Assembly: GCA_964057225.1 (NCBI GenBank)
Contig: OZ059895.1
Coordinates: 15,252,001-15,316,000, forward strand
Direction: 5' to 3'
DNA: 64,000 nucleotides
From: Auanema rhodensis
Taxonomy: Eukaryota > Animalia > Nematoda
Part shown: one piece after another, positions 1,770 through 47,317 of the stretch
Numbering within the stretch: the stretch's first letter is position 1
Layout: each line of letters begins with the position of its first letter
The notes under the pieces: generated by a model
Told to the model about the DNA's origin: nothing
Databases searched by the model: none
The model's input: the letters and a program-made list of their open reading frames with translations, nothing else
Made by a program: the position numbers and the translations under genes

Positions 1770-3760
1770 ATGAAGATCCCTACTGTTCGATATAATGTAC
1801 TGAAACATGTGGATGTACCTATTCATTACCACACTTTAAAAAAGGTTTTAGCTTTCTTAGCAGTTTTAATTGCAGTTTATATATTATATACTAAGAGGGA
1901 AGGTTAGTTAAATCATGTTTTCTTAAAAATTTGTGAAGTTTCCAACTTTTTAGAACATATTCGTAAACAATATGTACTTGAATGGGAAGAGTTCTTATCA
2001 AATATCAAACAGAATTATCTTAGCATTGAAGGTAATGGTGGTCGTGTAGGTAATCAAGTAAGTTCACCTTCATATTTTCTCAAAATCAGTTATAACTTCT
2101 AAAACTACTGAACGATGACGAATTCATTCAGATATTCACATTGGCATCTGGCTGGGGTATAGCTAAAAAACTCAATCGAACCTTCTATATTTCTAAAAAT
2201 TCGGATGAACGCTTTAGTATTGAGAGACAACGTTCAATAACCGAGAAAATATTTCCCAAACTGAAAAATTTGTATGTATATATGGTTAGTTGTAATCATA
2301 CATCAATTAAACCGAACACTTACAACTATAACTTGAATTCAGAAGCCTCCGGCATCCATGGAAACCGCAGTCGAGCATGACTATCAAAACGGAAAGCAGT
2401 GTTGTTGTACCTATGAAGACCCTTTAAAGTAATGAAATTCTTTAGCCTGAAACTAACCAGTGACTTTATTTTAGACATCGTAATGAAAAAAGCAAATTTC
2501 TATTATTGAAAACAAAATTTACTCAGAATATGCTCAACTTTTTTGATTCTATGGACGAGTTCAAGACATATCTGGAATTTAGTCCAGACATTAAATCCTT
2601 TGGACAAGCATATATTAAGAAAAATCACATGTGTGTCTACAATTCTGCTTCTCTCTCATTGATTCTTTTTTTATTTTAAACTTTTTCCTTTTTCAGAAAT
2701 GCATCTGATCATATAGCCTGTGTTCATATACGAAAAACGGATTTTGTAGGCTTAAACCGAAATGTACCGGATGATGTTCTTGAAGCATTAATAGAATATT
2801 TCATGTCGAAAAATGTAAATTTATTTTTTTCAATTGAAATCTTCTGCCCTCCTTCGCCTACTCTCGATCTCGTTCTCTACATCTCTCTATTTCAGAATCA
2901 TAATAGGCTATTGTTCTTTGGAGATGACAGAAACTTTATGAATACATTATTAGAACGTTTAAAAAATAATAAGAATTTAGCCATTGCATCGGTAATTAGC
3001 ATCAGTTTTTCCTCTTTATTATCCTTCATTATACGACATTTTTCCAGGATTCTCTTGTTAGTGAGAATGAAAGTGGGGTCGATCTGTATCTTGCCAGTGA
3101 AGTATGCACAGCATTTCTTATAACTCATCCCGTTCGTTTTAATTCCTTTTTATTATATTTAATATATATTTACGGAAATGACATACGTTTATAGGCGACA
3201 ACATTTGGTTTTTGGTCAGCTTTTTTAACAAAAAATTGGAAAGACGTCTATTATTATTATATTCCAAATCAAGAAATAACATTGTATAAAAAAGGCTTCC
3301 CGTGAGTTTTTCTCCTTTTTTTTCTGTTTTTGATTGAGCTTCATGCTGCTGCTACTGCTGGCTATTGCTGCTTCTACAGCTTCTTCTACTGTTACCGGTA
3401 GTGCATGCTGGTTTTTGCAACTAATTGTGACAGATGTTGATGCTTCAATGCTCTTCAGAATTTTATTAGTTTTATTCTTTTTTATCTGAAAAAATAGACT
3501 TTTATTTGGTTGAAAATCTTTATTGCGACGACTATAATATCAGCACAACCAGTCAAGTCAGCATTCATTTTGAAATAACTATGTCTGTCAGGCTGAGCTA
3601 TATAATTTTAATTTTCGTTCTAAGACCGCTTTCCAATGCTTATTATTTTCCTCTGATATTCAAATACATTTAAAGAGTTTTTATGATATATTCCAGATTA
3701 CCATGGAATCCAATCGGCTATCAAAATAAATTGGTAGCACCCATAGAGCTTACTCCATAA
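1770..3760 (+). CDS. Alpha-1,2-fucosyltransferase (glycosyltransferase family 11), multi-exon type II membrane protein
   Basis: Spliced translation gives an N-terminal TM segment (VLAFLAVLIAVYILY) and the GT11 motifs GGRVGNQ|IFTLASGWGIAKKLNRT, ACVHIRKTDF, LFFGDD and TTFGFWSAFL. A TTTTCAG trans-splice-type acceptor lies at 1746-1752. Confidence 0.85.
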
Positions 3761-3947
3761 CTTAGGTTTCTTAATCTTATTTACTTTAATTTTTTTTTGC
3801 TTTATGTTATATGTGATAATGAATATCCAAACACAATAATATTATATGGATTATAGTTGATAGATCAAAGGAATTTTACAAAAAAATTATTCAAATGTTT
3901 GTGTGTTGCTCCGTATTTTTTGAATTTTAGAAACAATTTAAACTGTC

Positions 3948-4026
3948 AAGAATCAGATGTTGAAGCTTTCTACTGTAAATGGAGAAATAAACAGAATGTA
4001 ACCAATTTTTGGAGAAAGTTGGAGAT
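3948..4026. repeat. 79-bp segment with an inverted copy at 8448-8526
   Basis: Direct comparison: the reverse complement matches with 2 mismatches. Confidence 0.9.
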
Positions 4027-4714
4027 GAATGTAGCTGAACCCTACTGGACCTTGCCTACTAAAAGTTGTATGTACACAAATTTGATGAAATATGTTAGAA
4101 CATCATGCTTATGATAGCTTTTTGATTTTGAAAACAAATGAAATGTTTAAAGGGAATATGCGTATCTTCATGTAATTTCTAGGCTATAAACGAGGAGGAA
4201 GATGGTAAACAAATGAAGTACAATTAGATAATAAGGTTCATAAGGTTTATAAGTGATCTACTAATTGTTTTTTCTTTTATTAATCTGAACAGAAACTGTT
4301 TCTAGTTGAGAGTGAGGGTTCATAAAACAAATAAAACTTCAAATAGAAGAATCCGATAATGGTTTGTTCTCATTCTTTAGTATGGGTGCATGCAAACAAG
4401 TAAGATTGAACTTGATTGTACAACACATAAGCCCTTGAACGCTTGTCCCGAAATGGAAGAGATAGCAAGTTTCAAGAATTAAAACAATAATAAGCCTTTC
4501 GGCTCTCCAAAAAATATGATGTTTTAGATCACTAGTCGACAGCTAAACTGTGACTCTGTGATCAAATTGGGGGTTTGTGGTTTTTAAGGTTTTTAAAAAT
4601 TTACCAAACTATTGCAAAATAAGTTCATCGTATCATAAGCACGTGTTGTACATATATTGAAATTTCATAATATGCTAATGAGAAGTTGTTTTGATGATAG
4701 CATTTGAGCGTGGC

Positions 4715-4760
4715 AATAATATGTATTTTGCCGTTCTAGCGCACCTTTTCGCCCATCCTC
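4715..4760 (-). repeat. Diverged third TIR-like copy
   Basis: The reverse complement GATGGGCGAAAAGGTGCGCTAGAA resembles the 4839/8425 TIR. Its inner part (4715-4738) recurs inverted at 8553-8576 with 1 mismatch. Confidence 0.6.
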
Positions 4761-4947
4761 AATTTTCTGCATTTTTAAGCCATTTTAAGGCTGAATATCA
4801 ATGATTTTGTGTCTAAACTCATTGTATCTTTAAAAATGGATGGTCGAGAAAAGTGCGCTAACATTTTTAATAAAAATAATGTTCAATAAATGGTGAAGTC
4901 CAGAGGATCTGCGTCGCAAGCTCCTCCAGGAGTACCTGAGAATCTAA

Positions 4948-5154
4948 GATTCAATAACTAAAAATAAAGGAAATATTTTTTACTTTGACTCCTTCGGATT
5001 GGATCCACCAATAGAACTTCAAAAATATTTAAAAGATGAAAAAGATAAAGATAAAATAGAACTCTCCACATTTCAAATTCAAGAATTCGGAACTAATCAC
5101 TGCGGTTATTACTGCTTACTTCTTCTAAAGTTACTGGAACATTTGGAAGTTTAG
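4948..5154 (+). pseudogene. Maverick/Polinton adenovirus-type cysteine protease (adenain/PRO) fragment
   Basis: An intronless ATG-less frame reads FFYFDSFGLDPPIELQKYL...STFQIQEFGTNHCGYYCLLLL, carrying the YFDSFG and Q-x6-CG-x2-C motifs of Polinton maturation proteases. The upstream catalytic His region is missing. Confidence 0.8.
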
Positions 5155-5219
5155 GATTCTCTATTTCATCTTGAATTCTTTTATTGTAATAATCTACAAA
5201 CTCTTGACGTCTTCCCGTA

Positions 5220-5662
5220 CCGTCGAGAAATATTCGTTTTTGTTGCGGAGCAGAAGCGAAGACGGAATCTCAAACCGTCGATCTCTGTTTTGTAGAGTCA
5301 GCTCATGAGGAATCCATTTATCCAGCTTTTTCGTTTTTTCCAATGTTATTTAAATGCTCAGATACAGTTGCTATACTGACGTGAAGTTCAGTGGCAAGTT
5401 TTCTGACCGTTGTACGTGGATTAGATTCCACCAGACTCTTCAGAACGTCTTCATCAATCAGTGAATGACGACCACGACCTTTCACATCTTCTAAATTAAA
5501 ATCTCCGTTTCGGAATTTCTGGAACCAACGATCCACTGTGGATTCATGAACACTGCCTTGTCTCCATACTTCATTAATATTCCTAGTTGTTTGAGCTGCA
5601 CTTCGTCCGAGTTTGAACTCATAGAAAAAAATTTGACAAAACTGTTTTTTTGAAACATCCAT
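5220..5662 (-). mobile_element. Truncated mariner (Mos1/Hsmar-like) transposase, DNA-binding half
   Basis: The HTH region reads FFYEFKLGRSAAQTTRNINEVW, RWFQKFRNGDFNLED and GR..HS. After a frameshift it continues KKLDKWIPHELT, then breaks off before the DDD domain. Confidence 0.9.
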
Positions 5663-5829
5663 TTTGAATCACTATAACTACTTTATTTTCAGATTAATTT
5701 TGACCCAACTTAAACCCAGTAAAGTAACAACTAAAAAGTATAAGTTGTTAAAAAAAAGAAAAACCAATAATTTTGAGCAAAAAAATCGAAAGAACCATAT
5801 TAACCGTATTATTGCGTATTGCCACCGTA

Positions 5830-6651
5830 TTAAAATTCTCCAGCAACTTGTAAATCTGAATAAACTTGTCTTCTTATTCTACCAATCCTTTGATTTCCAA
5901 AAGTCTCGGAATTTTTAGATTTTCTGTTTTCTAATTCTGCGAGAGCATATTTAGCAAACTTAGTAACATATTCATCATAACTTGGAAAATTATCACAGTC
6001 TTCTCTAGTTTTTACAAAATCAGAGATTTCTAGATCTTTAAATTTCAAGTAAACTTCATAACTTGGTATCTTGGAGCAATCATTTTTGATATTTAAATAT
6101 TCTTCATAATTTGGTAATGGGATAGGTTTTAATTCTTCATTTCCATTTGCTTCTAGGAAGCTTTGCTTTCGCTTGATATTTCTTTTGGTTCTAGTAGCTG
6201 TATAATTATTATTAGTATTATTCATTGTCACCTCTTTAAATTTCACAAGCGAATCTGAAGGAGATCCTTTGAGTCTTTCTCGTTCTAATTTTTCTGGTTT
6301 TCTTTTTTCAAATTCTAGATATTTCTTCATCTTTTCATCTCTCCTCTTTTCAAATTCTATACGATCAGCTTCGTATTCATCTCTTACTTCTTTATCTTTT
6401 TGATACGATCCTGGATTTGAACTCATTTCTTTCAGACTACGAGTTAATGTTAGTGCTTGTGGTGTTGGAATTTTTGGAATTTTATTTTGTAACTGACGTA
6501 CTGCAAAACCTTCTTCACTAATTATGAGATCAAGATTACAATCTCTCACAATTTTGTTTTTAATCAAACTCAGAGCAATTTGTTTTTTACTATTTATCCA
6601 CAGTCCATATTCATGATTCCATTTAGTTTTCCAATTGAAATATATGGTGTG
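5830..6651 (-). CDS. Intronless orphan ORF, about 274 open codons and 5'-truncated (first ATG at 6426); charged coiled-coil plus three [LIF]PxY motifs
   Basis: The frame is open from 6651 to the stop at 5830 with no introns. It contains LPNYEEY, IPSYEVY and FPSYDEY. No family is recognised. Confidence 0.5.
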   Translation of the reverse strand, partial: HTIYFNWKTKWNHEYGLWINSKKQIALSLIKNKIVRDCNLDLIISEEGFAVRQLQNKIPKIPTPQALTLTRSLKEMSSNPGSYQKDKEVRDEYEADRIEFEKRRDEKMKKYLEFEKRKPEKLERERLKGSPSDSLVKFKEVTMNNTNNNYTATRTKRNIKRKQSFLEANGNEELKPIPLPNYEEYLNIKNDCSKIPSYEVYLKFKDLEISDFVKTREDCDNFPSYDEYVTKFAKYALAELENRKSKNSETFGNQRIGRIRRQVYSDLQVAGEF

Positions 6652-6842
6652 TCAATTGAAACGTAGCTACCCGTGGGAATTTCGAAAAAATATGATAATT
6701 TTTCAAATTTTTAAATTTTTAAAAAAATAATTACAAAATTTAAATATATTTAAATCTAATATTACAAAAAAAATTTTAATTTAATTTTTTTCACCTGAAA
6801 AAACTTTTTTTTTCACCTATTTCAATTTTTTCTGTTTTTGTT

Positions 6843-7335
6843 ATGGATGTAGCTCATATGCGCCATGTCTTTCTTTCTCATTTTGAAATTGGTGTTTCTG
6901 CTCATGAAGCCTACCGAAAAATGAAAGCTGTATATGGAGAATCTTCTCCAGCATATAGCACATGTAAGAAGTGGTTTGCCCGCTTCAAAACCGGCGAGAT
7001 CGATCTTGCAGATCGTCAAAGACCCGGTACCAGTCAGAAATTCAGTGATTCTGACCTTCAGAATGTTCTCGAACAGACTCCTGGAGCAACCCAACTCCAG
7101 ATCGGGAAAAAACTGAAGGTCAGCAGAACTGCTGTTTCTCTCCGGCTTAAAAAAATGGGGAAAAGTCACAAAATTTCTCCGTTTTCCCCCTATGTCTTGT
7201 CTGAGAGCAATCTTAGGACAAGAGTAACTTTAGCTCAGGATCTTCTGAAATTGAGCCAAAGAATTTAAAGGGTTGGTGACAGGAGATGAGAAGTGGATTC
7301 TCTATTCCAACCCAACCAGACCAAAGTTTTGGCTT
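6843..7335 (+). mobile_element. Second truncated mariner transposase, from a different subfamily
   Basis: The HTH region reads CKKWFARFKTGEIDLADRQRPG. After a frameshift near 7265 it continues GLVTGDEKWILYSNP (first catalytic Asp), then is replaced by unrelated GC-richer DNA. Confidence 0.9.
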
Positions 7336-7615
7336 CTCTCTTTTACCTAACAACACACTCTTAAAACACTTTCGCTCCTGACAATCTCTCGATGTTTAGG
7401 CGTGACCACTTTCTCTTTATGTGACCTTTTTTTCTCTTCCTGTGGCCGAGCACAATCACACATATGCTCCAGTTGAACTAGACGCACGCGACGCGACACG
7501 CAAACGCTTTGGGCTAGAGTGGAAGGGTGATGAGAGTGACGCGTGACCAGAGACGCAGTGGAACACGGGACGTCCGCAACACTCATTTGCTAATAACTGT
7601 CTCATTAGGTTAACA

Positions 7616-8406
7616 ATGGAAAAAATACGTGCAGAGAAGCTTGAACAGATGCTCTTCACATCGTCGAAACCCGATGAGGTTGCGCATAGATGCGTCGTCG
7701 CAATAGATGCAAAACACGCGGTGTCATTTCGACATGGCCAACATTCAATGCTGGAAGAAAACGAGACGGTGGTTTTGTACAACGTAGTCGATCCGACGCT
7801 GCAATACGAGGTTTTTTTCTCAATTATTTGAACAAGTTGCTGAATTTAAGCTGCTTTTCACTGAAGTTCTTGTTATTTTTCAGGCCATCGTTTCTGCAGT
7901 TTCGGATCATCAAGATATTATAATATTCAAACTAACCGTTGGAGAATTTATGAGCTACCCACATGCTACGGATACTCTGTATCCTGGTAAACCATACCTG
8001 CAGTTGGGTGTTAACCCCCGCCGACAGGCGCTATGGAAAGAAGGAATTGTTTCGGAAAGGAAAGGCATGTCTAATTTCTTAACTTTACAGATGTTAATTG
8101 TTTGATTTAGTTGGATTCTACGTCGGCACTTCTCATGGAAGCATCGGCGATTCGGGATCGGGAATATTTGATTCTTTTGGGCAGTTCCTTGGACTTTCGA
8201 TAGGCAAGAAGTCTTCCGCCTTCAAAGATCGCGAGAATATGCCGATCGGAGAAGTGGCTGATCATCACCCGGACACGCAAATAATTAACGCGGATGTCAT
8301 TTTGTGCGTTTCGGGTCTCGTTGATGAAGAAGTAAGTTGATTTATTATTAGTTAGAGAATTGGTTTAATTGTTATGTTTCAGTTCGATTTTTATTCAAAC
8401 TGTTAG
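7616..8406 (+). CDS. Trypsin/chymotrypsin-fold serine protease without signal peptide (wosp-like cargo candidate); 3' end provided by the TIR
   Basis: Exons of about 7616-7810, 7884-8064, 8111-8331 and 8383-8406 splice in frame. The putative triad is His (AVSFRHG), Asp (HQDIIIF) and Ser (IGDSGSGIF). Intron 2 requires a GC donor. Confidence 0.75.
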
Positions 8407-8898
8407 CGCACTTTTCTCGACCATCTTTCATATTACTGATTCTTGAGATCTCCAACTTTCTCCCAAAATGGGTTACATTCTGTTTATTTCTCCATTTACA
8501 GTAGAAAGCTTCAACATCTGATTCTTAGATATCAACAGCTGCTGTATAAAGTTAGAACGGCAAAAAACATATTATTCGTGGTAGAGTTCATGTGGCACAT
8601 GCTGCGCGATAGAGCGCGATTCTGGCGATTTAAAATGTTTTTTCAACTGTTTTAATAAATTTTTTTTAACACCATCGAAATATTTAATAATGTAGATATC
8701 TTGATATTGTATCGGAAATGAAGTTCGAAAGTATTCTGGATGTTCAAGTATGTTTGTGTTCATTAAAAAAAATGAATATTATTAATATTTATTACATGGT
8801 TGGTCAGACCGATTATTGGAGTTTTTAACTAAAAATGCCTTTTTGCCTTGTCTCAGTTGTTAAATACTCGTATAGTTGCACTCATTACAGTTTTGCTA

Positions 8899-9832
8899 TT
8901 AGCAGATATTGCATGTGGTGGCGCAAAGCTTCTTTCTCTCGGCATTATCGTAGAATGGGTTGGTGCAGAATCCGTTCTTAGCCCAAGCGGCGCAGCTAAA
9001 AGTTAATTTTCATGATGTGACTTTCATTAAAATATGATGAGGCTTACTTTTGGCTGGTATTAGGAACTGGTTTACAGGCTCCTGGGTTAGTTCCTGGGTT
9101 TGTTCCTGGGTTGGTGCTGCCTACAATCAAATGTTTAGATAGCGTGTGAACATGAATAGGAGCTTACTGCAGAGGTCACAGGTACGTTGGCAGTTGGTGC
9201 TGACGAAGGACTTGAAGCTGTCGATGAAGCACATTTGTGATTGTGTGGAACAGTCAACAGCCTTATCGATGCAACCTCCCAAAAGACAGAATCCGCAAGA
9301 GGCTGGGCAATCTTGAGCAATGATTTCTCTCCAGGCTGGATCGTTGCACATAGCCTTGGTCACAGTACTGCATGTGAGTCTTGGTTCTGAAAATGAGTAT
9401 TCTACAATGTGTACTGAAGAAAAGTTGTTTATACTGGCAGCATTCGAGCACTTCCATTCAGGGGTTTCACAGCAGTATCCACAGGTCTTGGGGCAGTTCT
9501 TAATAGCAATAGCTTTCAAATCCTCGTCAACGGTAGTAGTATCAGAAGTCTGAAATCGGTTCGATATTCTCGTCATGGATGATGTTCTTACCTCGCACGT
9601 TGGTGGTCTATCAGGAGTAGCGATATCAACAGCTGCTGTATAAAGTTTTTCGCAGGTGGCATCTGGATATTTGTTTTCACAGTTTACGGCAGATGGGAGG
9701 AACTGAAGTGAGAATTGCTTATGGCATTTAGAATAGAAAGGCACAAACATTTGTTCCATCGGTACAGTTGGTATCGACGAGACCAGCGGAAGCTGTTGCA
9801 AGGATGCAGGCGAAGAGAACGAAGCTGAACAT
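8899..9832 (-). CDS. Secreted multi-ShKT (ShK toxin-like) domain protein, copy 1
   Basis: Signal peptide MFSFVLFACILATASA is followed by repeated C..CPKTCGYC / CPASCGFC / CQRTCDLC / CATTCNIC ShKT C-termini and a TNPG x3 linker. Confidence 0.9.
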
Positions 9833-11139
9833 TGGTGCTCTGACAGCAGAATGATTGTGATATCTCTGACAAGGCTTATATAGTTGAAGATAGTGTCACA
9901 AGTTCTGTTAAAACCTTGGCCCATTACCATCTGAATCAACATAATCAGACAATGCCACGAAAAAAAAAACGAAACATCCATTTGTATCAATAAATCCAAT
10001 ATGCTTTATCTAGCTTAAAGATCAAGGCCATTCAGCAAATTAAATAATTGCAGTGAGAGAAGTATTCTTTAGCGTTTGCCATTTTCCGGAAGTTCGCTCA
10101 ATTTCAATACAGTTCATATATTTTGATATTTTGATGTTGAAAATGTCTGATACGCCAATTAGAACACTTCTATCTCACAGTTCATACACAGTTCCCTCGC
10201 AGATCCGAACTTTCAGCGTAGTTTTTGATCTCAATATGGAAGAAGTCGCGCATGCTTATGCTCAAACCTCCCTTCTTAATCAATTTTAAATCCTTTTACG
10301 TAACTATCATGACAGAGCGGTATCTGAGATCCCGATCAGATAAACAAGACAATATTTTATTGGATCTATATCAGATCTATATAAGAATTTGTAGCTTTTT
10401 AATAGAATAAGCATTTTCATCCAGCTTAGCAGATTAGATTATGTCTTTTTCCATTCACCAGCACGAGTATCAATCCGAACAGTGGGCTTCTACATACTTT
10501 AGAACATCAAGGATACTGTAGAAGAGATCTTCTTACACCTATGCTCAACTTTGTTGTTGAAGTTGAAAGGCAGTTGAAACAGTGTTAGTTTATTCTGAAC
10601 CCACTCATCTCTCTCACCAATTCCATTTTCATTATCACATGTTCAATTTTTTTGCTTGTAATATTTGGACAAAAAACTGATTTTTTTATGAAAAAAAAAT
10701 GAACAATGTGACTATTTTGTCAATCTATATCAATTATTTGCTCAAATGATATTTGGATAGCATTCCTATTCAGTACCATTTCAAATATGAACTACCGGTG
10801 TTTCAAACGCCTCAGATGTGTTTTAGGATATAGAATTCAATTAGAAACCTCCTCTTCAACTTTATTTTTCTTGTAAACTTTAGAAATTGGCTTGTATTGC
10901 ATACATTTTACCGCTCGGTTAAACCCATGTGAAAAACTGTGCGCGATTCGGCAGAGAGAAAGAGAAGAAAACGAATGCATGATAGCCAATAAAACTTATT
11001 TTAAATTACTATATAATTATTTATTTTAGAATATATATTTGTATAGTTATGTGTATAGTATTATATAATATATGAGTGTAGATAGTGAAAGACAATATAG
11101 TTAGAGAAAGATGTTGGTAAGCTTTCAGCTTTATCCAGC

Positions 11140-12065
11140 TTAGTTATTGCAGAGTCCGCATGTTCTACCACACGTTTGCTTCTTTTGGTGCTCTGGATAG
11201 AAGACGCTGGTGCAGTATCCGTTCTTTTTCCATGAAACACAGCTGAAGTAAAGTTTGTAAGGAAGGAAGATGGTATAACAAGGACAAACCTTGGAGAGCT
11301 GTCATGACAAGTACCGTTTCCAGAATTTATCTTTTCGCAGAGTCCGCAGGTACGTTTGCAGTTAGTCTGAATAGATGGAGCGCTTTATGTGATAATCTAT
11401 TTTATTGTTTTTTACTCTCGAGAAATCTTCAAGCCCGTGCATAAAACAGACGGAAGGATTCAAATGACAATCGGGAGCAGCGTCTATGCATCCACCGTCC
11501 ATGCAGAATCCGCAAGAGGCTGGGCAATCTTGAGCAATAATCTCTCTCCATGTTGGATCATTGCACATAGCCTTGGTGATTGTCTTGCAAGCAAGTCTTG
11601 GAACTAGAAAAGCTTCGTGAGCCTATGAATCGAGGTAAAATAAACTTACTGGGAGCATTTTCGCAGCTCCACTCTTTGGTGATGCAACAATATCCACAGG
11701 TTTTGGGACAATTAGCTATAGCGATATCTCTGATTTCAACGTCCAGAGTAGTTCCATCAGAAGACTTTAAACAGATAGATAGAGCTAAACATTTCTAATC
11801 GAATAAAAAGTTCTTACGAAGCAAGCTTTTGGTCGTTCATCTCCTTTACCAACTTCAATCTTTCCTGTATAAATGGCTTCACATGCAGCATCTGCATAAA
11901 CATTTTGGCAATTAGCAGCAGAAGCAAGATACTGTAAGAAGACAATAGAACTATTGAAGTCATGAAACGGATGATTACGTTAGTTCCATCCGTACAGTTG
12001 GTATCAACTGGAGCACCAGCATAAGCTACCATGATGATAGAAGCGAAAATGAGACACTTATACAT
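11140..12065 (-). CDS. Secreted multi-ShKT protein, copy 2
   Basis: Signal peptide MYKCLIFASIIMVAYA; motifs CPKTCGYC, CPASCGFC, CKRTCGLC and CGRTCGLC; exon layout matches copy 1. Confidence 0.9.
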
Positions 12066-12728
12066 TACTAGTATGAGAATTAGATCGTTGCCAGATGATG
12101 ATCTGATATTACCAGTTATGTTGCTTTTCCTTATATAGTCGTCGGTAAAAATTTATTTGTCAGCCTATATGGCTTCATGAAAAGACGTCTGAGCCAATAG
12201 TAAATGCTTTGTCTCCATTCATTTTGGTTGAAACTTTCGTCAAAAAACTCCAAAAATTAGAGCTTTGTTGTCGCCTTATATGTTATTGTTTATAAAATTT
12301 ATTATTTAGTACTTGAATAAACAAAATAAATTTTATATTTATCTTCTTTTCAGTTCAATCAAATAAACTGCTAATCTTTTTACGATGGAAAAACTGTTCT
12401 ATGTGCTGTAGCACCCATTTCATACGAATTTCATGAAAATCCAATATTTTTTTGAATGTAAATGAACCGATTGCTGCTTCACCATTCGTTCAAATATCAA
12501 TGTTTTTATTGCTTTAATAGGAAATGATATAGAATGTTTCTCATGTTATATGTTAAGAAAGAAAAATGTGGATGAAATCATCTTGTCATCCTCTCCGAAC
12601 TAGCTGAGACTGTGAAGAAACAGAATCTCAGCGTTCATTATCTTTTAAATATTTGGTGGTAAGATGCTGATTTATAATACATTTTTATTAAAAAAATATT
12701 TATTTGAAAAGATATAATTATTAATTTA

Positions 12729-14578
12729 TTACGGAATAACGTCAGAGAAATATGCTGTGAATCTGTAAGAAGGTAAAAGTTCCACATACAATTCGTTAAC
12801 TTCCAATTTCACTAAAATGTAAGGAGATGTCGATCTAAACTTCACAACAGATGAGTTACGATCAGGAAATCTGAAAGAGTTAATTGATTTACTTTGGAAA
12901 TGTATATTTAAGCTTTCAATATTGATTGCAATATCTCAATAATAGGATTGACGGACGAGCTTCATGCTAAGGAGCCCAAGATTTACTAAAACTTAAGCAA
13001 ATGAGCATCGAAGCATCAGGTTAATGTTCCATTTATTAAGTTTACAGAAGAAAGCGGAAAAGCAGCTTATCGGGCTAGTTGAAATAGGAGTCTTACCTTC
13101 CCAATATTGGATATCTAACAGTAGGACCATCGTAGATAGTAAGTACATCGAAAGGATTAATTCGAACCTCATAGAACCAGAGTTCAATTCTGAAAAAGAA
13201 TCATATTAATAAAATAATTATGTTTAATTCAAATAGAACCTCCGATAACTTTTGGATGTTAGTTGATATGTGCAATTATAATATGGATAGTTATTTGGAA
13301 ATCGACAACTTGTAATCTGGAAAATAAATTAGAACTGGGAATGATTGATAACTTATCATACCATTCCAGGAGTATATAATACTCCATCATTACAACCAGA
13401 TGATATTTTTCCTGATACAGAAGTAGCGGCTGATGTTACCTCAGTATTCCCTGGTCCAACAGTCATATTTTCAGCTTCTGAATCCGATACTGTGTCGGTG
13501 ACATTCATTTCATGAGCATTCCCTGGTCCAACAGTCATATTTTCAGCTTCTGAATCCGATACTGTGTCGGTGACATTCATTTCATGAGCATTCCCTGGTC
13601 CAACAGTCATATTTTCAGCTTCTGAATCCGATACTGTGTCGGTGACATTCATTTCATGAGCATTCCCTGGTCCAACAGTCATATTTTCAGCTTCTGAATC
13701 CGATACTGTGTCGGTGACATTCATTTCATGAGCATTCTCTGGTCCAACAGTCATATTTTCAGCTTCTGAATCCGATACTGTGTCGGTGACATTCATTTCA
13801 TGAGCATTCCCTGGTTCAGCAGTCATACTTCCAGCTTCTGCTTTTGGAGCTTCATAGCTTGATGTTTGTGTACTCATCAGTTCCGTAGTGTAGTTTATTG
13901 GTACTTGTGTAGTCGTAGAGTTATTGCTATTACTGGTTTGACACACATGAGAGCTAAGCCATTGAAAACAGTATTGAGGAAGCCATTTACCCGAATCAGG
14001 TCCATTTGCATTCATTTTGTAGCAAGTTAGTATATGTGAATTATCTGAAAATAGTTACAGAGTTAGAAAGCTTTCTTATGCATAAAATCGTATAACCTGA
14101 TTCGAAATTAGTAAATGAATCATTAGTGAGTTTAGTACTGTCGTCATACATGCAAAAACCATTATTCACCCTATAACATCGAATTCCAATCCATGCTTCA
14201 TCCCCAGGTTCCAACAAAGAACGAATCAGTTCATTTGACTGAAAGTCATCAATACATCCGTTGTTCTATATTATTCAAGCTCATCACTTACAGCTGCATT
14301 TTTCGGCATAGCAAGATAGCCGTTTTCTTTGTATTCACAATGCTCTGATGCTTTAAAATATGAAACTTCGCATCCTTTGTAAATCGAAAATAAATGTTTT
14401 TTTCCTAAAGTATGAAGAAACGATTTCGAACCTTATAGCAATGCGTATCGTCGCAAACACTTCGGCTGGTAAATTCACATGCTTTTACTATAAATGTTTT
14501 GATTAAAGCAATGAACTAAAACTACAACTTCAATTTACCATAAATGAAGAAAGTCGGAAAAATTAGGAATATCTTCAT
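12729..14578 (-). CDS. Secreted C-type lectin + Ser/Thr/acidic repeat stalk + CUB domain protein (one splice acceptor looks defective)
   Basis: Signal peptide MKIFLIFPTFFIYVKA. CTLD motifs: CYK, ASEHC..GYLA, EAWIGI, GKW..QYC..SHVCQ. CUB motifs: FPNNYPYNNCTYQL and DVLTIYDGP. Confidence 0.8.
13446..13838 (-). repeat. Coding 72-bp minisatellite, about 5.4 copies (24-aa unit GPGNAHEMNVTDTVSDSEAENMTV)
   Basis: Units start at 13447, 13519, 13591, 13663, 13735 and 13807 and are nearly identical. Confidence 0.95.
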
Positions 14579-16385
14579 AATATCCAAGACAACGCAATAT
14601 TACAGAGATAGTGTTATGTATAACATTAAGTAATCCTGCTTTTATACTTTTTTCAAGTTTTAAAAATATAACATCCGGCAATAAGATGGTGAAAAATATT
14701 AATGATAAGAAGTGTAAGCTTGTTGTTGTCATTAAAATTTTTAAAAATTCAAATTAAATCTAATGTTTAGATTGTGATTCATTTTCAAAAAATTTATGAC
14801 AAGCTCATTTTCAACTTTAATCTTTCAAACATACCTTTTTAGATCACATTCCCTGAATTTTCGTAGTGAAATCTCGTCATCAAATGATATAACTAAAAGG
14901 AACTAATCAATCGATTGTATTAACTAATTTGAATTTGAATATGTGTTGTTGTTTTAATTTTTTTCATTTTCAGATAAAGTGCCAAGTAATGCGGTCGGAT
15001 TTTCGAAAAATTAGCATAACATATGCACCAACAAATGCACCCGGATATGTACGCGGAAATGTACGCGGACACGTCTACTGAGCAAATTTAGAATCAAATT
15101 TCATGACAATTGTTTTCTTTTAATATCTATTTATATAATAGTTAAAGTGATGGATTAAATAAACATTTTATATATACATGTACCGTACGAGATTCAGTAT
15201 GATCATACAACATTGAACATATATATTTTTGAAAAAAAAACCTAAATATATATTTTTTTAGATTGATATCATGTTTTGAACCAATTTCTTTTTTTAACTT
15301 TATCTGGATAAAAGTAGCTGTCATAAAATTTGTTTTTCTTCTAATATTCACAGCTGAAACCAATGCCCTATGATGCATTTATCAATTAACTTACTTAGGA
15401 CTGTGATCAATTACAGGACATGACGTGATGGATTGTTTTGCAGCTAAAAATATAAAATATTTTATCATTAGTATCTTAGATAACTATTGCAGCGCATGTA
15501 TGCTGGCAATGATCTGTGGTGGATCTGACAAAATTCGGAATCTCACATATTGGAGGATCTGTTAAACAATATTTTTTTCTCCAATACATCCGTGTAAAAT
15601 CTCATGTTCTTCAAGCTTTTGGGTTATCCTGTGCTAAAGTCCGTTTTTATTCTGCTTATATACATTTAATTACTGTACTGCAGTTTAATCTACGAACAGT
15701 TTAATTCAATTTAAGTACATCGGATAGCAATAAAATCCACGTATTTTCTACATTATCACAATTCCAATCTTTGTACATGCAGCAATAGTCACACGTTTTC
15801 AAGCAATTTATAATAGACGATGTATCTCGCGTCTTCATCAAGTTCGTCGAATCCTGAGCTACTGCAGAGATGCTGTACTTAAAAGTGCAAAAAGATGAAT
15901 CAGCAATATCTCAGATTCATTAACTATATATCACATTTATAGTAATATAGTATATTTTTGCGTCAGTTTCTTCCTTTACCCCACATCTACGTCAGTACCT
16001 ATACCCTAGCGTACTGCTACAAGTTGTTTGCTAGCACTCAGATATACTAAGTACAGTTACCTTTATTCAAAAGAAAAACGATTTAAAATGAATATTTTCG
16101 GAATAGTGTAATAAACTCAATTTCACATTAACAGAGCGTCATTATTCTCTGTATGAACCATATGAAACCATAAATGATTATCATCTAATATGTAATCAAT
16201 CAATGTTTTTAAGTTCAGATTTTCAAACTTTCAGGATAACAGAAACAGGAATTCATATAAATTATGATAACGTAAAATATTTATTCATGTGTGGTCAAAT
16301 CACATGATTTAAGATTTCAGTTTAAGTGAAAAAGTGAAAATTTGAAAGCTCATTTCTAACATCTTCCTTATCATTATGGCGAAAT

Positions 16386-17323
16386 TTAGCAGAGTCCGCA
16401 ACTCTTCTGGCATCTCTTCTTTCTGATCTCGTTGTTGTAGAAGGAATTCGTACAGAATGCATTCTTCACATAGTTGGAGCAGCTATAAATGATATTATAC
16501 TTGTTGGATAAAACTTGAAATCCCTCACTTGGGGTCGGCATCAACGCAGGTTCCTGGGTTAGTTGGGCTCTTAGTTGTGGCTCCTGGGGATGTTTTATCG
16601 CAGAGTCCGCAAGTACGTTTGCAGTTGGTCTACAGACAGCAGCATTAGTTTTGAAAATTTGCTTCATAATCTTACTTGGACAAAGGTTTCGAGACCATTC
16701 ATGAAGCAGATAGATGGGTTGAGGTTACAGTCTGGAGCAGCATCAATACATCCCCCGAGGTTACAGAATCCACAGACAGCTGGACAGTCAGCAGCAATAA
16801 CTTCTCTCCATAATGGATCCTTGCACATCTTGTCGGTTATGGTGCTACAACTGATTCTTGGCACTTAAAGTAGCAGGATTAGGAATATATTCTAGGTTTG
16901 GGGATCATTTACGTCTAGCGTTATCGCACTTGAAAGCTGAAGATTCACAACAGTATCCACAAGATTTGGGACAAGTTTCGATAGCCAAAGCCTTCAATTC
17001 TTCATCAACAGTAGTACCATCAGTGCTCTTAAGAAATATCTGGTTCATAATGGTTTTGAATTTGAACTTACAAAACAGGTTTGAGATCTGTCGACAGCGG
17101 CTCCAGCAACCATACCAGCATCTGGTTTGTAGAGCTTTTTGCAAGAAGTATCAGCTTGAATATTGTCGCAGTTGAAAGCTGTGGGTAAGAACTGAAATAA
17201 ATTGGTTGATGAAGTAATATCATATGAAAAGCTTACGTTGGTACCGTCGGTACAGTTAAGATCAACGATGCCGCCAGCAGAGGCAAAGCCGAGAAGGGCG
17301 AAGAAAACGACTTTAGAATACAT
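16386..17323 (-). CDS. Secreted multi-ShKT protein, copy 3
   Basis: Signal peptide MYSKVVFFALLGFASA; motifs CPKSCGYC, CPAVCGFC, CKRTCGLC and CQKSCGLC. Confidence 0.9.
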
Positions 17324-17859
17324 TGGAATAATGAAAATTGAGCTTTCCTAGCTTTCGTTTTTCGTGCTTAATGAGTACTTCAGCACTTATATAAGACTCG
17401 GAAGCAATAGCGTTCATTGTTTCGAAACATATCTACCACAAGGCTGTATCAACAAAATTACAGTTGATCATATTATTTTGCCGATATTGTTTAAATATTC
17501 GAAACTGTAACTTTTGATCTTCAAATTGAAATTCATGTGGGTCCTTGTTCAGAACAATAATGTATACGACGCCTCCGTTTTTTTTTCAGCAGCTGCATTT
17601 GATTAACTCGACGTGTATATGATATACCTGCAAGTATTTAATGCATGAAACTATCATCAACTCGAGGATTCATGCCTACGCTCTTGTACCGTTTCTATCA
17701 GCTCTCTCATTTCCATACCATGTCATGTATACCGGGTTGCATGCTGATGAAAGTAAGTGGTTTAAGATTTTGAACGACTGATATACTCTCGTACCTTTAA
17801 TTAGAATAGCATTAGAGCGCGATTTAAAATCAAAAATCATTTTATTCAGTTCATTCTCC

Positions 17860-18260: not shown

Positions 18261-19621
18261 GGGCTATTTTGCATGAACTCTACTATGTCTTTCAGTATAG
18301 CATCAAAAATATTTCTGTTATGATGACGTCCGCGCCACATAAACTCACATAAGTAGCTCTCTAGCATCTCAGGCTTAACTCCCCACATCTTTTAAAACAT
18401 ATTTTTCGCTGTGTTCCATAAACCCTCGATTCTATTTGTGTGAGCACCAGTGTTTGGGTAAACGAAATTGTATTAGTCAGAACAAAGCTTAGAAGTTGGC
18501 AGAAACAATCTCTCTGGTAGAAAGCTGTTGGCAGCTTCTTTTTTCTCAACACGCCACTTTAAGGAGAACATAGAGAGGGGTAATATGATATTAATAATAT
18601 TTTTCGTTTCAATTTTAAAATTCTATTATTGTTTTTTTGCACTAACTATATTTACTTTATATTTTCTAAAATTAATATTATTACTCCAAATTATTTTCAA
18701 GCAACTGCGCGAGTTTTTGCAAAAGGGGCGGAGTTAGAATTTGGGCGGGTTATAAACTGTAGTAGAACCCACCCAGGAGCTCCTTTTTGGCAGTTTGTGG
18801 GTTCGCCCTGAAAATAATAGAAACTTCCTGCCGGAGTTAACCCAAAACTTAAGCTTTTTTGAAGTTGGGTTTAATTTCATGAGTTTCTTCAAGACTTCAG
18901 ATACAATTTTTTTATTGTGTTAAGAGTACACTAAAGGTCTATTTTTCTTTTGAACGGGATAATTTGGTTATACGTCGACCAATTTCTCTTCATAGATTTT
19001 TAGTAAAATTCAGATGTTCGAGCTTACTTGTTTGAAGCTATGCTCCAGATAAATCTTTGTTATTGATCGAGCTTGGTGCTTAGAATCATTTTGAAAATTT
19101 TCTAATTAACGTGTTACTAGCCCCAAAATTTTGTTATATCAAAATATTCAAAAAACATTATTTAAATCTATTTTTATTGTAAAAACATATATTTTTTTAA
19201 TTGAATATATACTATATAAACTTGTAAAATTTATGATTTGTTTTGTAATTTGAAACAATTTTTTGAGGACCTAAGGACTCTAAGAAGAGATGGTCCGACT
19301 TTCATCGCATTTGGCTGTTCATCTTGTATGAACAACAGCAAAAAAGTGAGTCCAAAATTTTTCTGAATTTCTTTTGTAAAATTTCGAGTAATGAGTGGAA
19401 CCACGGAACAAGTTCGATACCAATGTATTCAACATTAGTTTTCAATTAAACTTTTTAATTTGTGTGTCGTGTCTTTGTATACTTTGTATGTAATATTACA
19501 TGATAGCGTAAAATATTTATTCATGTGTGGTCAAATCACATGATTTAAGATTTCAGTTTAAGTGAAAAAGTGAAAATTTGAAAGCTCATTTCTAACATCT
19601 TCCTTATCATTATGGCGAAAT

Positions 19622-20559
19622 TTAGCAGAGTCCGCAACTCTTCTGGCATCTCTTCTTTCTGATCTCGTTGTTGTAGAAGGAATTCGTACAGAATCCATTC
19701 TTCACAAAGCTGGGGCAGCTATAAATGATATTATACTTGTTGGATAAAACTTGAAATCCCTCACCTGGGGTCGGCATCAACGCAGGTTCCTGGGTTAGTT
19801 GGGCTCTTAGTTGTGGCTCCTGGGGCTGTTGATTCGCAGAGTCCGCAAGTACGTTTGCAGTTGGTCTACAGACAGCAGCATTAGTTTTGAAAATTTGCTT
19901 CATAATCTTACTTGGACAAAGGTTTCGAGACCATTCATGAAGCAGATAGATGGGTTGAGGTTACAGTCTGGAGCAGCATCAATACATCCCCCGAGGTTAC
20001 AGAATCCACAGACAGCTGGACAGTCAGCAGCAATGACTTCTCTCCATAATGGATCCTTGCACATCTTGTCGGTTATGGTGCTACAACTGATTCTTGGCAC
20101 TTAAAGTAGCAGGATTAGGAATATATTCTAGGTTTGGGGATCATTTACGTCTAGCGTTATCGCACTTGAAAGCTGAAGATTCACAACAGTATCCACAAGA
20201 TTTGGGACAAGTTTCGATAGCCAAAGCCTTCAATTCTTCATCAATAGCAGTACCATCCTCGCTCTTAAGAAATATCTGGTTCATATTGGTTTTGAATTTG
20301 AACTTACGAAACAGGTTTGAGGTCTGTCGACATCGGCTCCAGCAACCATACCAGCATCTGGTTTGTAGAGTTTTTGGCAAGAAGTATCAGCTTGAATATT
20401 GTCGCAGTTGAAAGCTGTGGGTAAGAACTGAAATAAATTGGTTGATGAAGTAATATCATATGAAAAGCTTACGTTGGTACCGTCGGTACAGTTAAGATCA
20501 ACGATGCCGCCAGCAGAGGCAAAGCCGAGAAGGGCGAAGAAAACGACTTTAGAATACAT
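19622..20559 (-). CDS. Secreted multi-ShKT protein, copy 4 (near-identical paralog of copy 3)
   Basis: About 19500-20569 aligns almost base-for-base with about 16264-17333, introns included. Confidence 0.9.
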
Positions 20560-29664: not shown

Positions 29665-29736
29665 GCCTCATTGGCTCAGGGGCAGAGCGTCTGTCTAGTA
29701 AACAGAAGGTCGCTGGTTCGATTCCAGCATGAGGCA
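29665..29736 (+). tRNA. tRNA-Thr(AGT)
   Basis: Cloverleaf with a GCCTCAT/ATGAGGC acceptor stem, a TCTGT/ACAGA anticodon stem with loop CT-AGT-AA, a GGTTCGATTCC T arm, and a downstream T-run terminator. Confidence 0.95.

Positions 29737-43439: not shown

Positions 43440-43471
<32 letters not shown>

Positions 43472-45701: not shown

Positions 45702-45764
<63 letters not shown>

Positions 45765-47270: not shown

Positions 47271-47317
<47 letters not shown>

What the first reader, a model, noticed from the sequence alone, without database searches (positions are those of the whole stretch)
4839..8425. Composite TIR-bounded element packaging Maverick genes and a wosp-like protease: a possible second vehicle for Maverick cargo
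Seen: 39-bp inverted repeats in element orientation enclose, in order, an adenain fragment, mariner HTH A, an intronless orphan ORF, mariner B (cut just after DEKW) and a spliced serine protease. Established: nematode Mavericks carry cargo such as wosp serine proteases across species, and one such protease forms part of the C. briggsae msft-1 toxin (Widen et al. 2023, Science). Inference: Maverick pieces and their cargo have been recaptured between short Tc1/mariner-type TIRs. This Pack-mariner-like unit could be moved in trans and could spread a horizontally acquired protease, here into a ShKT/lectin defence-gene cluster.
Basis: partly seen in the sequence, partly recalled or inferred. Interest (0 to 1): 0.85.

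Follow-up and report, generated by a model that had tools for sequence, protein, structure and literature searches.

The report
Decayed Maverick relic with protease cargo
The 39-base inverted repeats are real, but they look like inner leftovers of the longer end-repeats of one decayed virus-like Maverick insertion in an Auanema-like nematode. That insertion still carries a nearly whole HtrA-like protease gene; it is not a new mariner-type vehicle for Maverick cargo.

Summary
The 39-nt inverted repeat (4839-4877 / 8387-8425, 37/39) is real and unique in the window. It has no TA and no other flanking duplication, and it is not the outer boundary. A second inverted pair lies outside it (4715-4738 / 8553-8576, 23/24) and is abutted by CGTGGC / CGTGGT. 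Between the two right-hand arms lie 127 nt, mostly short copies of nearby host DNA, including 26 nt of the neighbouring ShKT exon.

Contents:
- two unrelated mariner N-terminal fragments;
- a fragment of a larger nematode protein family, so not an orphan ORF;
- an unverifiable adenain-like stretch;
- a GC-rich, spliced protease gene.

The three main protease exons align collinearly (59-70% identity) to a 210-aa Caenorhabditis family with a conserved His/Asp/Ser triad and a DegS/HtrA fold.

The host is Auanema-like, not Caenorhabditis. In Auanema sp. JU1783 the same intergenic interval is about 180 bp, against about 5.1 kb here.

Best reading: a decayed, internally deleted Maverick/Polinton relic (4715-8576) with remnants of its own end-repeats, nested mariner debris and a repair patchwork. 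The Pack-mariner reading is not supported. Copy number and an empty-site allele could not be tested, because the source genome is not in the collections.

The parts
4709..4714 (.). Left copy of the candidate 6-bp target-site duplication (CGTGGC)
   Evidence: Abuts the outer left arm. It matches 5 of 6 bases of the hexamer abutting the outer right arm. Empirical chance at a fixed boundary is about 0.007.
4715..4738 (.). Outer left arm (24 nt), proposed tip of the left terminal inverted repeat
   Evidence: 23/24 complementary to 8553-8576.
4739..4838 (.). Middle of the left end region (100 nt), with no partner on the right
   Evidence: No match to 8426-8552 or anywhere else in the window. A weak likeness of 4739-4758 to the arm tip did not pass an edit-distance test.
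4839..4877 (.). Inner left arm, the finding's left 39-nt 'TIR'
   Evidence: 37/39 complementary to 8387-8425 and unique in the window. No TA or 2-10-bp direct repeat at its edge.
4948..5151 (+).
   Evidence: No Pfam family at E <= 1 and no relevant PDB match at E <= 10. At most the C-terminal half of such a protease.
5197..5668 (-). Mariner fragment A: N-terminal DNA-binding part and linker only; catalytic domain absent
   Evidence: HTH_48 at E 2.3e-17. The next stretch matches the SETMAR/Mos1 linker at E 1e-12. The following stretch is not mariner. One frame change, one truncation.
5827..6710 (-). Fragment (middle part) of a nematode protein family of 330-450+ aa; possibly the Polinton PC1/fusogen or another Polinton ORF
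   Evidence: 58-67% identity to C. japonica A0A8R1I341 and to C. briggsae CBG09973, CBG03968, CBG25980 and CBG02913. Cut at both ends, with one frame change. No Pfam or PDB match, and the AF2 model failed.
6843..7347 (+). Mariner fragment B, a different subfamily from A: N-terminal part up to the first catalytic motif, the rest absent
   Evidence: HTH_48 at E 2.6e-15. Matches Mos1 residues 9-138 at E 8e-23. The DEKW stretch is in another frame. One frame change, one truncation.
7348..7615 (+). GC-rich region upstream of the protease gene
   Evidence: GC 41-52% against about 30% in the flanks and 36% for the window. This fits the high-GC cargo region described for nematode Mavericks (10.1101/2022.07.12.499685).
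7616..8406 (+). Spliced HtrA-like serine protease gene (wosp-like): three main exons plus a short last exon that runs into the right arm
   Evidence: The exon pieces, searched apart, align collinearly to P0007 at 66, 59 and 70% identity. The His/Asp/Ser columns are invariant or nearly so in the family. Trypsin_2 is borderline. The AF2 model of P0007 matches DegS/HtrA1. The family's conserved C-terminal tail is missing, which counts as one truncation.
8387..8425 (.). Inner right arm, the finding's right 39-nt 'TIR'
   Evidence: It overlaps the end of the protease reading frame.
8426..8552 (.). 127-nt patchwork between the inner and outer right arms. 8436-8446 is the reverse complement of 3946-3956. 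8448-8526 is the reverse complement of 3948-4026 (77/79). 8528-8553 is a direct copy of 9622-9647 (26/26).
   Evidence: The 26-nt source lies inside the conserved coding exon of the ShKT gene, so the copy here is secondary.
8553..8576 (.). Outer right arm (24 nt), proposed tip of the right terminal inverted repeat
   Evidence: 23/24 complementary to 4715-4738.
8577..8582 (.). Right copy of the candidate 6-bp target-site duplication (CGTGGT)
3948..4026 (.). Source, or twin, of the 79-nt patch; lies outside the element
   Evidence: 97.5% inverted match to 8448-8526.
9622..9647 (.). Source of the 26-nt patch, inside the ShKT gene's coding exon
   Evidence: 26/26 direct match to 8528-8553.
2004..3751 (+). 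Left host neighbour: conserved multi-exon gene, orthologue of a 349-aa gene of Auanema sp. JU1783
   Evidence: Collinear tblastx matches to L001 15279-13853.
8899..9999 (-). Right host neighbour: first gene of a tandem ShKT cluster
   Evidence: ShK domain at E 1e-15. Paralogues near 11.4-12.0, 15.4-15.9, 16.7-17.2 and 19.9-20.4 kb. Orthologous to L001 10001-13665.

Best explanation
Window 4715-8576 (3.86 kb) is the decayed remnant of one Maverick/Polinton-type insertion in the genome of an Auanema-like rhabditid nematode.

Shown:
- The roughly 5-kb interval between two convergent host genes is lineage-specific.
- It contains foreign, GC-rich DNA with a near-complete HtrA-like (wosp-like) protease gene next to one end.
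- It also holds a fragment of a nematode-wide multi-copy protein family and two unrelated truncated mariner copies.
- The two ends share an outer 24-nt and an inner 39-nt inverted segment in mirrored order.
- The outer segments are abutted by a 5/6 direct hexamer.
- The middle of the right end consists of short copies of nearby host DNA.

Inferred history:
- A Maverick carrying the protease as cargo next to one TIR integrated here and made a 6-bp duplication.
- Mariners landed in it.
- Large internal deletions removed the core genes, the distal halves of both mariners and the tail of the protease gene together with the inner part of the right TIR.
- A break in the right TIR was repaired by template switching to sequences within about 5 kb.

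On this reading the 39-nt 'TIRs' are surviving inner pieces of the Maverick's own long TIRs, not Tc1/mariner-type ends. The relic has no integrase, polymerase or capsid gene and is most likely immobile. The protease gene keeps open main exons and its catalytic triad. It may still be expressed, or it may be a young pseudogene.
For: - Inverted pairs and their mirrored order (outer 24 nt, inner 39 nt).
- 5/6 hexamer abutting the outer pair, empirical P about 0.007; none at the 39-nt pair.
- Polintons have 100-1500-bp TIRs and 5-8-bp TSDs and are reported in Auanema rhodensis: (PMC10748475; 10.1101/2023.08.22.554363).
- Cargo lies between a TIR and the rest of the element, is GC-rich and has introns. 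Here the protease region is 41-52% GC and sits next to the right end.
- Protease family, triad and HtrA fold.
- The ORF belongs to a multi-copy Caenorhabditis/Heterorhabditis family.
- Synteny with Auanema sp. JU1783 and a 180-bp interval there.
- No other transposon or Maverick domain elsewhere in the window.
- The 26-nt patch source lies in a conserved ShKT exon, so the patchwork is secondary.
Against: - No core Maverick gene (pPolB, integrase, capsid, ATPase) is present.
- The two supposedly Maverick genes are unverified. The adenain-like stretch has no Pfam or PDB match at the thresholds used. The ORF family gave no Pfam or PDB match and its model failed.
- The end sequences could not be compared with any Maverick, because fetching such elements was left out.
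- The hexamer match is imperfect and could be chance.
- The middles of the two ends are unrelated, so the 'long TIR' is inferred from two short blocks.
- Neither copy number nor an empty allele is known.
Confidence: 0.55

Rival explanations
1. There are no terminal repeats at all. A piece of foreign DNA (about 4878-8386) was joined to the chromosome, and its right junction was sealed by a chain of four or five short templated patches copied from DNA within about 5 kb (microhomology- or template-switch repair). The 39-nt 'TIR' and the 24-nt pair would just be two of those patches, copied in inverted orientation from the left flank.
For: - The 190 nt at 8387-8576 is almost wholly accounted for by copies of 4839-4877, 3946-3956, 3948-4026, 9622-9647 and 4715-4738.
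- One patch certainly comes from a host exon.
- Family homology of the protease stops where the first patch begins.
- The patches are of similar age, at 95-100% identity.
Against: - The two blocks shared with the left end sit in exactly the mirrored order and orientation expected of TIRs, with the outer block outermost. Random patch order would give this about 1 time in 12.
- The outermost block is abutted by a 5/6 direct hexamer that copying would not produce.
Confidence: 0.22
2. The finding's reading, with adjusted bounds: a non-autonomous TIR element (a Pack-type or 'mini-Maverick' unit) that captured Maverick fragments and the protease. It would still be movable in trans and so act as a second vehicle for the cargo.
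For: - Inverted ends at 95-96% identity.
- A possible target-site duplication at the outer pair.
- A precedent exists: msft-1 was captured by a MULE in C. briggsae.
Against: - No TA, and no likeness of the arms to the resident mariner ends.
- There is only one copy in 64 kb.
- The right end is disrupted by 127 nt of patchwork.
- The contents look like deletion debris: every gene but one is truncated and both mariners lack their distal halves.
- No second copy or empty site could be shown, because exact look-ups of three window ORFs found nothing on record, so other assemblies of this species could not be reached.
Confidence: 0.08
3. An unrelated graveyard. The arms belong to a short non-autonomous element or MITE family of this genome. 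The Maverick-like pieces, mariners and protease are independent insertions that happen to lie between two copies.
For: - The interval also holds about 1.3 kb of further unexplained lineage-specific DNA (3760-4714 and 8577-8890).
- There is a weak hairpin-like likeness of 4739-4758 to the arm tip.
Against: - That likeness failed the edit-distance test, where chance gives about 3 hits per 64 kb at 5 edits or fewer.
- No further copy of either arm exists in 64 kb or in the 23.7-kb Auanema sp. JU1783 locus.
- The two arm blocks are mirrored at both ends, which two independent MITE copies would not explain.
Confidence: 0.12

Closest known systems
Pseudogenised Mavericks/Polintons of nematodes carrying wosp (wasp) protease cargo (Widen et al., 10.1101/2022.07.12.499685; Jeong et al., PMC10748475)
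   Same: - An intron-bearing HtrA-like protease in a GC-rich region next to one end repeat.
- Long-TIR and roughly 6-bp TSD pattern.
- Decay by stops, frame changes and deletions.
- High protein identity to distant nematode genera.
- Polintons are already reported in Auanema rhodensis.
   Different: - Only about 3.9 kb remains and no core gene survives.
[quoted passage not shown]
- Auanema is not among the species listed with this protease family in the 2022 preprint.
- The end repeats are reduced to 24 + 39 nt.
msft-1/tlpr-1: a wosp protease captured inside a MULE with 870-bp TIRs in C. briggsae (same preprint)
   Same: A Maverick-derived protease sitting between inverted repeats of a cut-and-paste-like unit. 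This is the precedent behind the finding's idea.
   Different: - In C. briggsae the TIRs are long and 96.7% identical, a transposase lies inside, and the insertion site differs between wild isolates.
- Here there is no matching transposase, no TA or MULE-type duplication at the 39-nt pair, and no evidence of a second site.
Pack-MULE / Pack-TIR and internally deleted non-autonomous DNA transposons formed by abortive gap repair with filler DNA (my own knowledge, not tested here)
   Same: Gene fragments between inverted ends, with short templated filler segments.
   Different: The filler here lies in the end region between the inner and outer arm rather than in the body. The arms are not those of the mariners inside.
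Templated insertions at double-strand-break repair junctions (template switching, polymerase-theta-type end joining; my own knowledge)
   Same: A chain of short copies (11-79 nt) of nearby sequence in both orientations, joined with 0-1 nt of overlap.
   Different: The sources lie up to about 4.5 kb away and the patches are longer than the few-nucleotide to tens-of-nucleotide inserts usually described. No mechanism can be assigned from sequence alone.

Membership tests
Tc1/mariner-type non-autonomous element (Pack-mariner, MITE) | TA target-site duplication directly flanking the terminal inverted repeats | tested here: not met
   No TA and no 2-10-bp direct repeat at 4839 / 8425, even with the boundary shifted by up to 3 nt either way.
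Tc1/mariner-type non-autonomous element (Pack-mariner, MITE) | Terminal repeats shared with an autonomous mariner/Tc1 of the same genome | tested here: inconclusive
   The arms have no match to the 5' regions of the two mariner fragments inside, nor elsewhere in the window. The rest of the genome could not be searched.
Tc1/mariner-type non-autonomous element (Pack-mariner, MITE) | Several copies with the same ends at different sites, or an empty-site allele | not testable with these tools
   The source genome is not in the collections. Exact look-ups of three window ORFs found nothing on record.
Maverick / Polinton | Terminal inverted repeats of 100-1500 bp (PMC10748475) | tested here: inconclusive
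   The end regions are 163 and 190 nt and share an outer 24-nt and an inner 39-nt block in mirrored order. Their middles are unrelated.
Maverick / Polinton | Target-site duplication of 5-8 bp, typically 6 | tested here: inconclusive
   CGTGGC / CGTGGT abut the outer arms: 5 of 6, P about 0.007. No empty site is available to confirm it.
Maverick / Polinton | Core genes: protein-primed PolB, integrase, packaging ATPase, capsid proteins, adenain-like protease | tested here: not met
   None was detected in the element. A separate scan of 99 open stretches of 85 aa or more elsewhere in the window found none either. The adenain-like stretch is unverified. This is the expected state for a relic, not for a member in working order.
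Maverick / Polinton | Nematode-specific PC1/fusogen gene (730 aa or more, signal peptide, C-terminal membrane helix, gB-like domain I-II, long central helix) | tested here: inconclusive
   The ORF family has a long central helix (P0001 residues 225-288). Read by eye from the alignment, P0004 has a C-terminal hydrophobic stretch. The model as a whole has pLDDT 39, and the PDB and Pfam searches are blank.
WOSP (WASP) worm HtrA-like serine proteases | HtrA/Deg-like trypsin fold with a His-Asp-Ser triad and no PDZ domain | tested here: met
   The AF2 model of the closest intact relative, P0007 (pLDDT 82.6), matches DegS-deltaPDZ, HtrA1, Rv3671c and MamO at probability 1.0 and TM 0.60-0.67. The triad columns are invariant or nearly so. 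The same motifs are visible in the window's exon pieces.
WOSP (WASP) worm HtrA-like serine proteases | N-terminal ubiquitin-like domain (described for MSFT-1; said to be modular in the family) | tested here: not met
   The window gene and its about 210-aa relatives start directly with the protease domain.
WOSP (WASP) worm HtrA-like serine proteases | Sequence relatedness to a named WOSP (MSFT-1, CBG29787, CBG26403 and others) | tested here: inconclusive
   No hit carries such a name. The species range overlaps the published list. Three C. bovis copies on one contig, with accession numbers two apart, resemble the listed CBOVI.g591-593, but the identifiers cannot be linked.
WOSP (WASP) worm HtrA-like serine proteases | Physical association of relatives with Maverick genes (20% within 6 kb in the preprint) | not tested
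   Looking up the loci of relatives could bring in Maverick DNA, so the step was left out and referred.
Mariner (Tc1/mariner superfamily) transposase | HTH_48 N-terminal domain and a DDD catalytic domain | tested here: inconclusive
   HTH_48 is met in both fragments. The catalytic domain is absent in A. Only its first motif is present in B.
Adenain (peptidase C5, clan CE; Maverick PRO) | His-Glu/Asp-Gln-Cys catalytic arrangement, recognisable by profile | tested here: not met
   No Pfam family at E <= 1 and no relevant PDB match at E <= 10 for 4948-5151. Any His-bearing half is absent. The protein I had in mind is the adenovirus-type maturation protease.

The most novel reading that the evidence does not exclude
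The 3.9-kb unit is a 'mini-Maverick': a non-autonomous derivative that keeps just enough of both Maverick ends, plus a wosp-like protease, and is present at several sites in Auanema genomes. It would be a cargo-only satellite of Mavericks.
Probability: 0.07. Interest if true: 0.7.

Novelty: new member of a known kind. Interest (0 to 1): 0.3.

Why it matters
If the best reading holds, this is an ordinary outcome of known biology. Mavericks deliver HtrA-like protease cargo across nematode genera and then decay in place.

Three modest points are added:
- A wosp-like gene in an Auanema-like genome, a genus not in the 2022 list of carriers. It is 59-70% identical, exon by exon, to its closest Caenorhabditis relative (P0007), while a neighbouring host ShKT protein is only 39% identical. 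That contrast fits horizontal arrival but does not prove it, because ShKT proteins evolve fast.
- A family variant without the ubiquitin-like domain.
- A clear small example of a multi-patch templated repair scar inside an element's end.

The result also cautions that short inverted repeats around transposon debris need a flanking-duplication check and a look further out before they are called TIRs.

Tried and rejected
- **Third, degenerate copy of the arm tip at 4739-4758 (small MITE with TA ends).** Rejected. It needs more than 5 edits, and chance gives about 3 such hits per 64 kb.
- **Mariner A as an internally deleted element with both ends.** Rejected. The stretch beyond the linker is not mariner.
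- **79-nt pair 3948-4026 / 8448-8526 as outer TIRs.** Rejected. It is not nested with the 24-nt pair and has no flanking repeat.
- **Fold identification of the ORF family.** The AF2 model was too poor (pLDDT 39), so no fold search was run on it. The PDB profile search was blank.
- **Exact look-ups of three window ORFs (a ShKT ORF, a mariner ORF and a repeat-bearing ORF), to reach other assemblies of the same species.** None is on record.
- **Alignment of the 180-bp Auanema sp. JU1783 intergenic region to the window.** Only 14-15-nt matches beside the ShKT gene's 3' end, so no empty site at base resolution.
- **Rfam and tandem-repeat scans.** Nothing in the element.
- **Joining the protease exons.** The exons were searched and compared one by one by reference, so no joined model was tested.

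Full report
**1. Observation**

The 39-nt inverted repeat is real. Its arms are 4839-4877 and 8387-8425, 37 of 39 complementary, and 3509 nt lie between them. A 25-nt core occurs only at these two places in 64 kb and never in 100 shuffles.

A sensitive comparison of the two flanks shows more.
- 3948-4026 is 97.5% complementary to 8448-8526 (79 nt).
- 4715-4738 is 96% complementary to 8553-8576 (24 nt).
- 8528-8553 is an exact direct copy of 9622-9647.

So the 190 nt at 8387-8576 are almost wholly made of blocks that recur nearby. In order they are: the 39-nt arm, 22 nt that include an 11-nt copy of 3946-3956, the 79-nt block, one base, the 26-nt block, and the 24-nt block.

**2. Contents**

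- Two mariner N-termini are confirmed by Pfam HTH_48 (E 2e-17 and 3e-15) and by matches to SETMAR and Mos1.
  - They belong to different subfamilies and point away from each other.
  - Fragment A ends after the linker, and the next stretch is not mariner.
  - Fragment B ends just after the first catalytic motif.
  - Each has one frame change and one truncation.
- The 'orphan ORF' is not an orphan.
  - It is 58-67% identical to the middle of proteins of 327-453 aa from C. japonica, C. briggsae (four proteins) and Heterorhabditis.
  - One of these (CBG25980) continues for about 285 more residues, with a hydrophobic stretch near its end.
  - The window copy is cut at both ends and has one frame change.
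  - The family has no Pfam or PDB match.
  - An AlphaFold model of P0001 was too poor to use (pLDDT 39). Only a 64-residue helix was confident.
  - That layout recalls the Maverick fusogen MFUS-1/PC1, which has domains I-II, then a long helix, then a membrane anchor. This is a lead, not a test.
- The 'adenain fragment' (4948-5151) gave no Pfam or PDB match. I cannot confirm it.

**3. The protease**

- Exon 3 alone found 31 proteins, most of about 200-220 aa.
- The three exon pieces align in order to residues 1-65, 68-125 and 127-199 of P0007 (C. japonica, 210 aa) at 66, 59 and 70% identity.
- Other close relatives are in C. bovis (three copies on one contig, with accession numbers two apart), C. 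sp. 36, C. nigoni and C. auriculariae.
- In an alignment of 14 members, His40 and Asp76 are invariant and Ser140 is nearly so (90% or more), inside a Gly138-Asp139-Ser140-Gly141 motif whose two glycines are invariant. The same motifs are seen in the window's pieces.
- Pfam Trypsin_2 is borderline.
- The AlphaFold model of P0007 (pLDDT 82.6) matches DegS-deltaPDZ, HtrA1, Rv3671c and MamO at probability 1.0 and TM 0.60-0.67.
- This meets the structural definition of the worm HtrA-like serine proteases of Widen et al.. The ubiquitin-like N-domain is absent, and no hit carries a published WOSP name.
- State of the gene: the three main exons have no stop or frame change. The second intron lacks a canonical donor in the required frame, and a Logan relative (P0014) reads through the matching stretch. 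The conserved 11-residue tail of the close relatives is missing, and the reading frame instead ends inside the right arm. That counts as one truncation.
- The gene and its upstream region are 41-52% GC, against about 30% around them.

**4. Host and setting**

- The neighbouring ShKT ORF is closest to Auanema sp. JU1783 (53%), and only 39% identical to Caenorhabditis proteins.
- The JU1783 locus L001 is syntenic in reverse: an MSP-domain gene, a 349-aa gene, then the ShKT cluster with a calreticulin-family gene beyond it.
- There the two convergent 3' ends are about 180 bp apart. In the window they are about 5.1 kb apart (3760-8890).
- L001 has nothing like the protease, the ORF or the mariners.
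- So the whole interval is lineage-specific.
- A scan of 99 open stretches of 85 aa or more elsewhere in the window found no other transposon or Maverick domain, and no lectin domain.
- Polintons are already reported in Auanema rhodensis.

**5. What the repeats are**

- The 39-nt pair has no TA and no 2-10-bp flanking direct repeat.
- It has no likeness to the resident mariner ends.
- The outer 24-nt pair is abutted by CGTGGC on the left and CGTGGT on the right. This is 5 of 6, with an empirical chance of about 0.007 at a fixed boundary.
- The two shared blocks lie in mirrored order: the 24-nt block outside and the 39-nt block inside at both ends.
- Polintons have TIRs of 100-1500 bp and TSDs of 5-8 bp, and their cargo lies next to one TIR.
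- The 26-nt block comes from a conserved ShKT coding exon. The middle of the right end is therefore a later, local patchwork.

The simplest history has four steps. A Maverick with protease cargo integrated here. Mariners inserted into it. Deletions removed nearly everything else, including the inner right TIR and the protease tail. A break in the right end was repaired by template switching. I give this reading 0.55.

**6. Rivals**

- All inverted blocks are repair patches and there are no TIRs (0.22). The mirrored order and the flanking hexamer disfavour this.
- A still-mobilisable Pack-type or mini-Maverick unit, which is the finding's idea (0.08). Against it: no TA, a disrupted end, debris-like contents and a single copy in the window.
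- Arms from an unrelated MITE family (0.12). No further copy exists in the window or in L001, and the putative third copy failed a chance test.

**7. Limits and steps left out**

- The source genome is not in the collections: exact look-ups of three window ORFs found nothing on record. Copy number and an empty-site allele could not be tested.
- I did not look up the genomic surroundings of relatives of the protease or the ORF, and I did not scan the viral collection with the end sequences. Either step could fetch Maverick DNA, a virus-like element of animals. This is listed under referred steps.

- (my scripts) and searches printed open stretches and frame translations with coordinates for the region, in the manner of the ORF listing. 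These show where frames of the broken genes end. None of those places is repeated in the notes or in this report, and nothing was deleted.

**9. Verdict**

The Pack-mariner interpretation is not supported, although the Maverick-cargo flavour of the locus is. This is a new member of a known kind, of modest interest.

Noticed in passing
window 8387-8576, with sources at 3946-4026, 4715-4738, 4839-4877 and 9622-9647: A 190-nt stretch made almost wholly of 11-79-nt copies of sequences up to about 4.5 kb away, in both orientations, joined with 0-1 nt of overlap. It looks like a multi-jump template-switch repair scar.
   Followed up: partly
window 1-22000 against L001 (Auanema sp. JU1783, CALQYR020007486.1): Conserved synteny in reverse orientation: MSP-domain gene, 349-aa gene, tandem ShKT cluster, calreticulin-family gene. 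The window therefore comes from an Auanema-like rhabditid, not from Caenorhabditis as the finding assumed.
   Followed up: yes
window 8899-9999, 11136-12094, about 15440-15850, 16390-17350, 19620-20550 (all on the - strand): Five tandem ShKT-domain genes or gene pieces, 60-65% identical in DNA. Auanema sp. JU1783 has four in the same place.
   Followed up: partly
window 3857-4111 (+): An 85-codon open stretch rich in cysteines, with no Pfam match and no counterpart in the JU1783 locus. Seventy-nine nt of it are the twin of the patch at 8448-8526.
   Followed up: partly
window 13446-13840: An array of 5.5 copies of a 72-nt unit (98% matches) inside a 219-codon ORF on the - strand. This suggests a repeat-bearing, possibly secreted, protein.
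   Followed up: no
window about 31400-49000 (- strand): Many exons with Kunitz and lustrin cysteine-rich domains, probably one very large multi-Kunitz protein gene.
   Followed up: no
window 29665-29736 (+): One tRNA gene, the only Rfam match in the window.
   Followed up: no
proteins P0008-P0014 and others (Logan assemblies): Many short predicted proteins are single exons or intron read-throughs of the same protease family from unannotated sequencing runs. P0014 reads through the stretch that matches the window's second intron, so that intron is shared.
   Followed up: partly
proteins P0038, P0055, P0056 (C. bovis): Three near-identical protease genes on one 5.3-Mb contig, with accession numbers two apart. 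They are reminiscent of the three consecutive C. bovis WASP genes in the preprint's list.
   Followed up: partly
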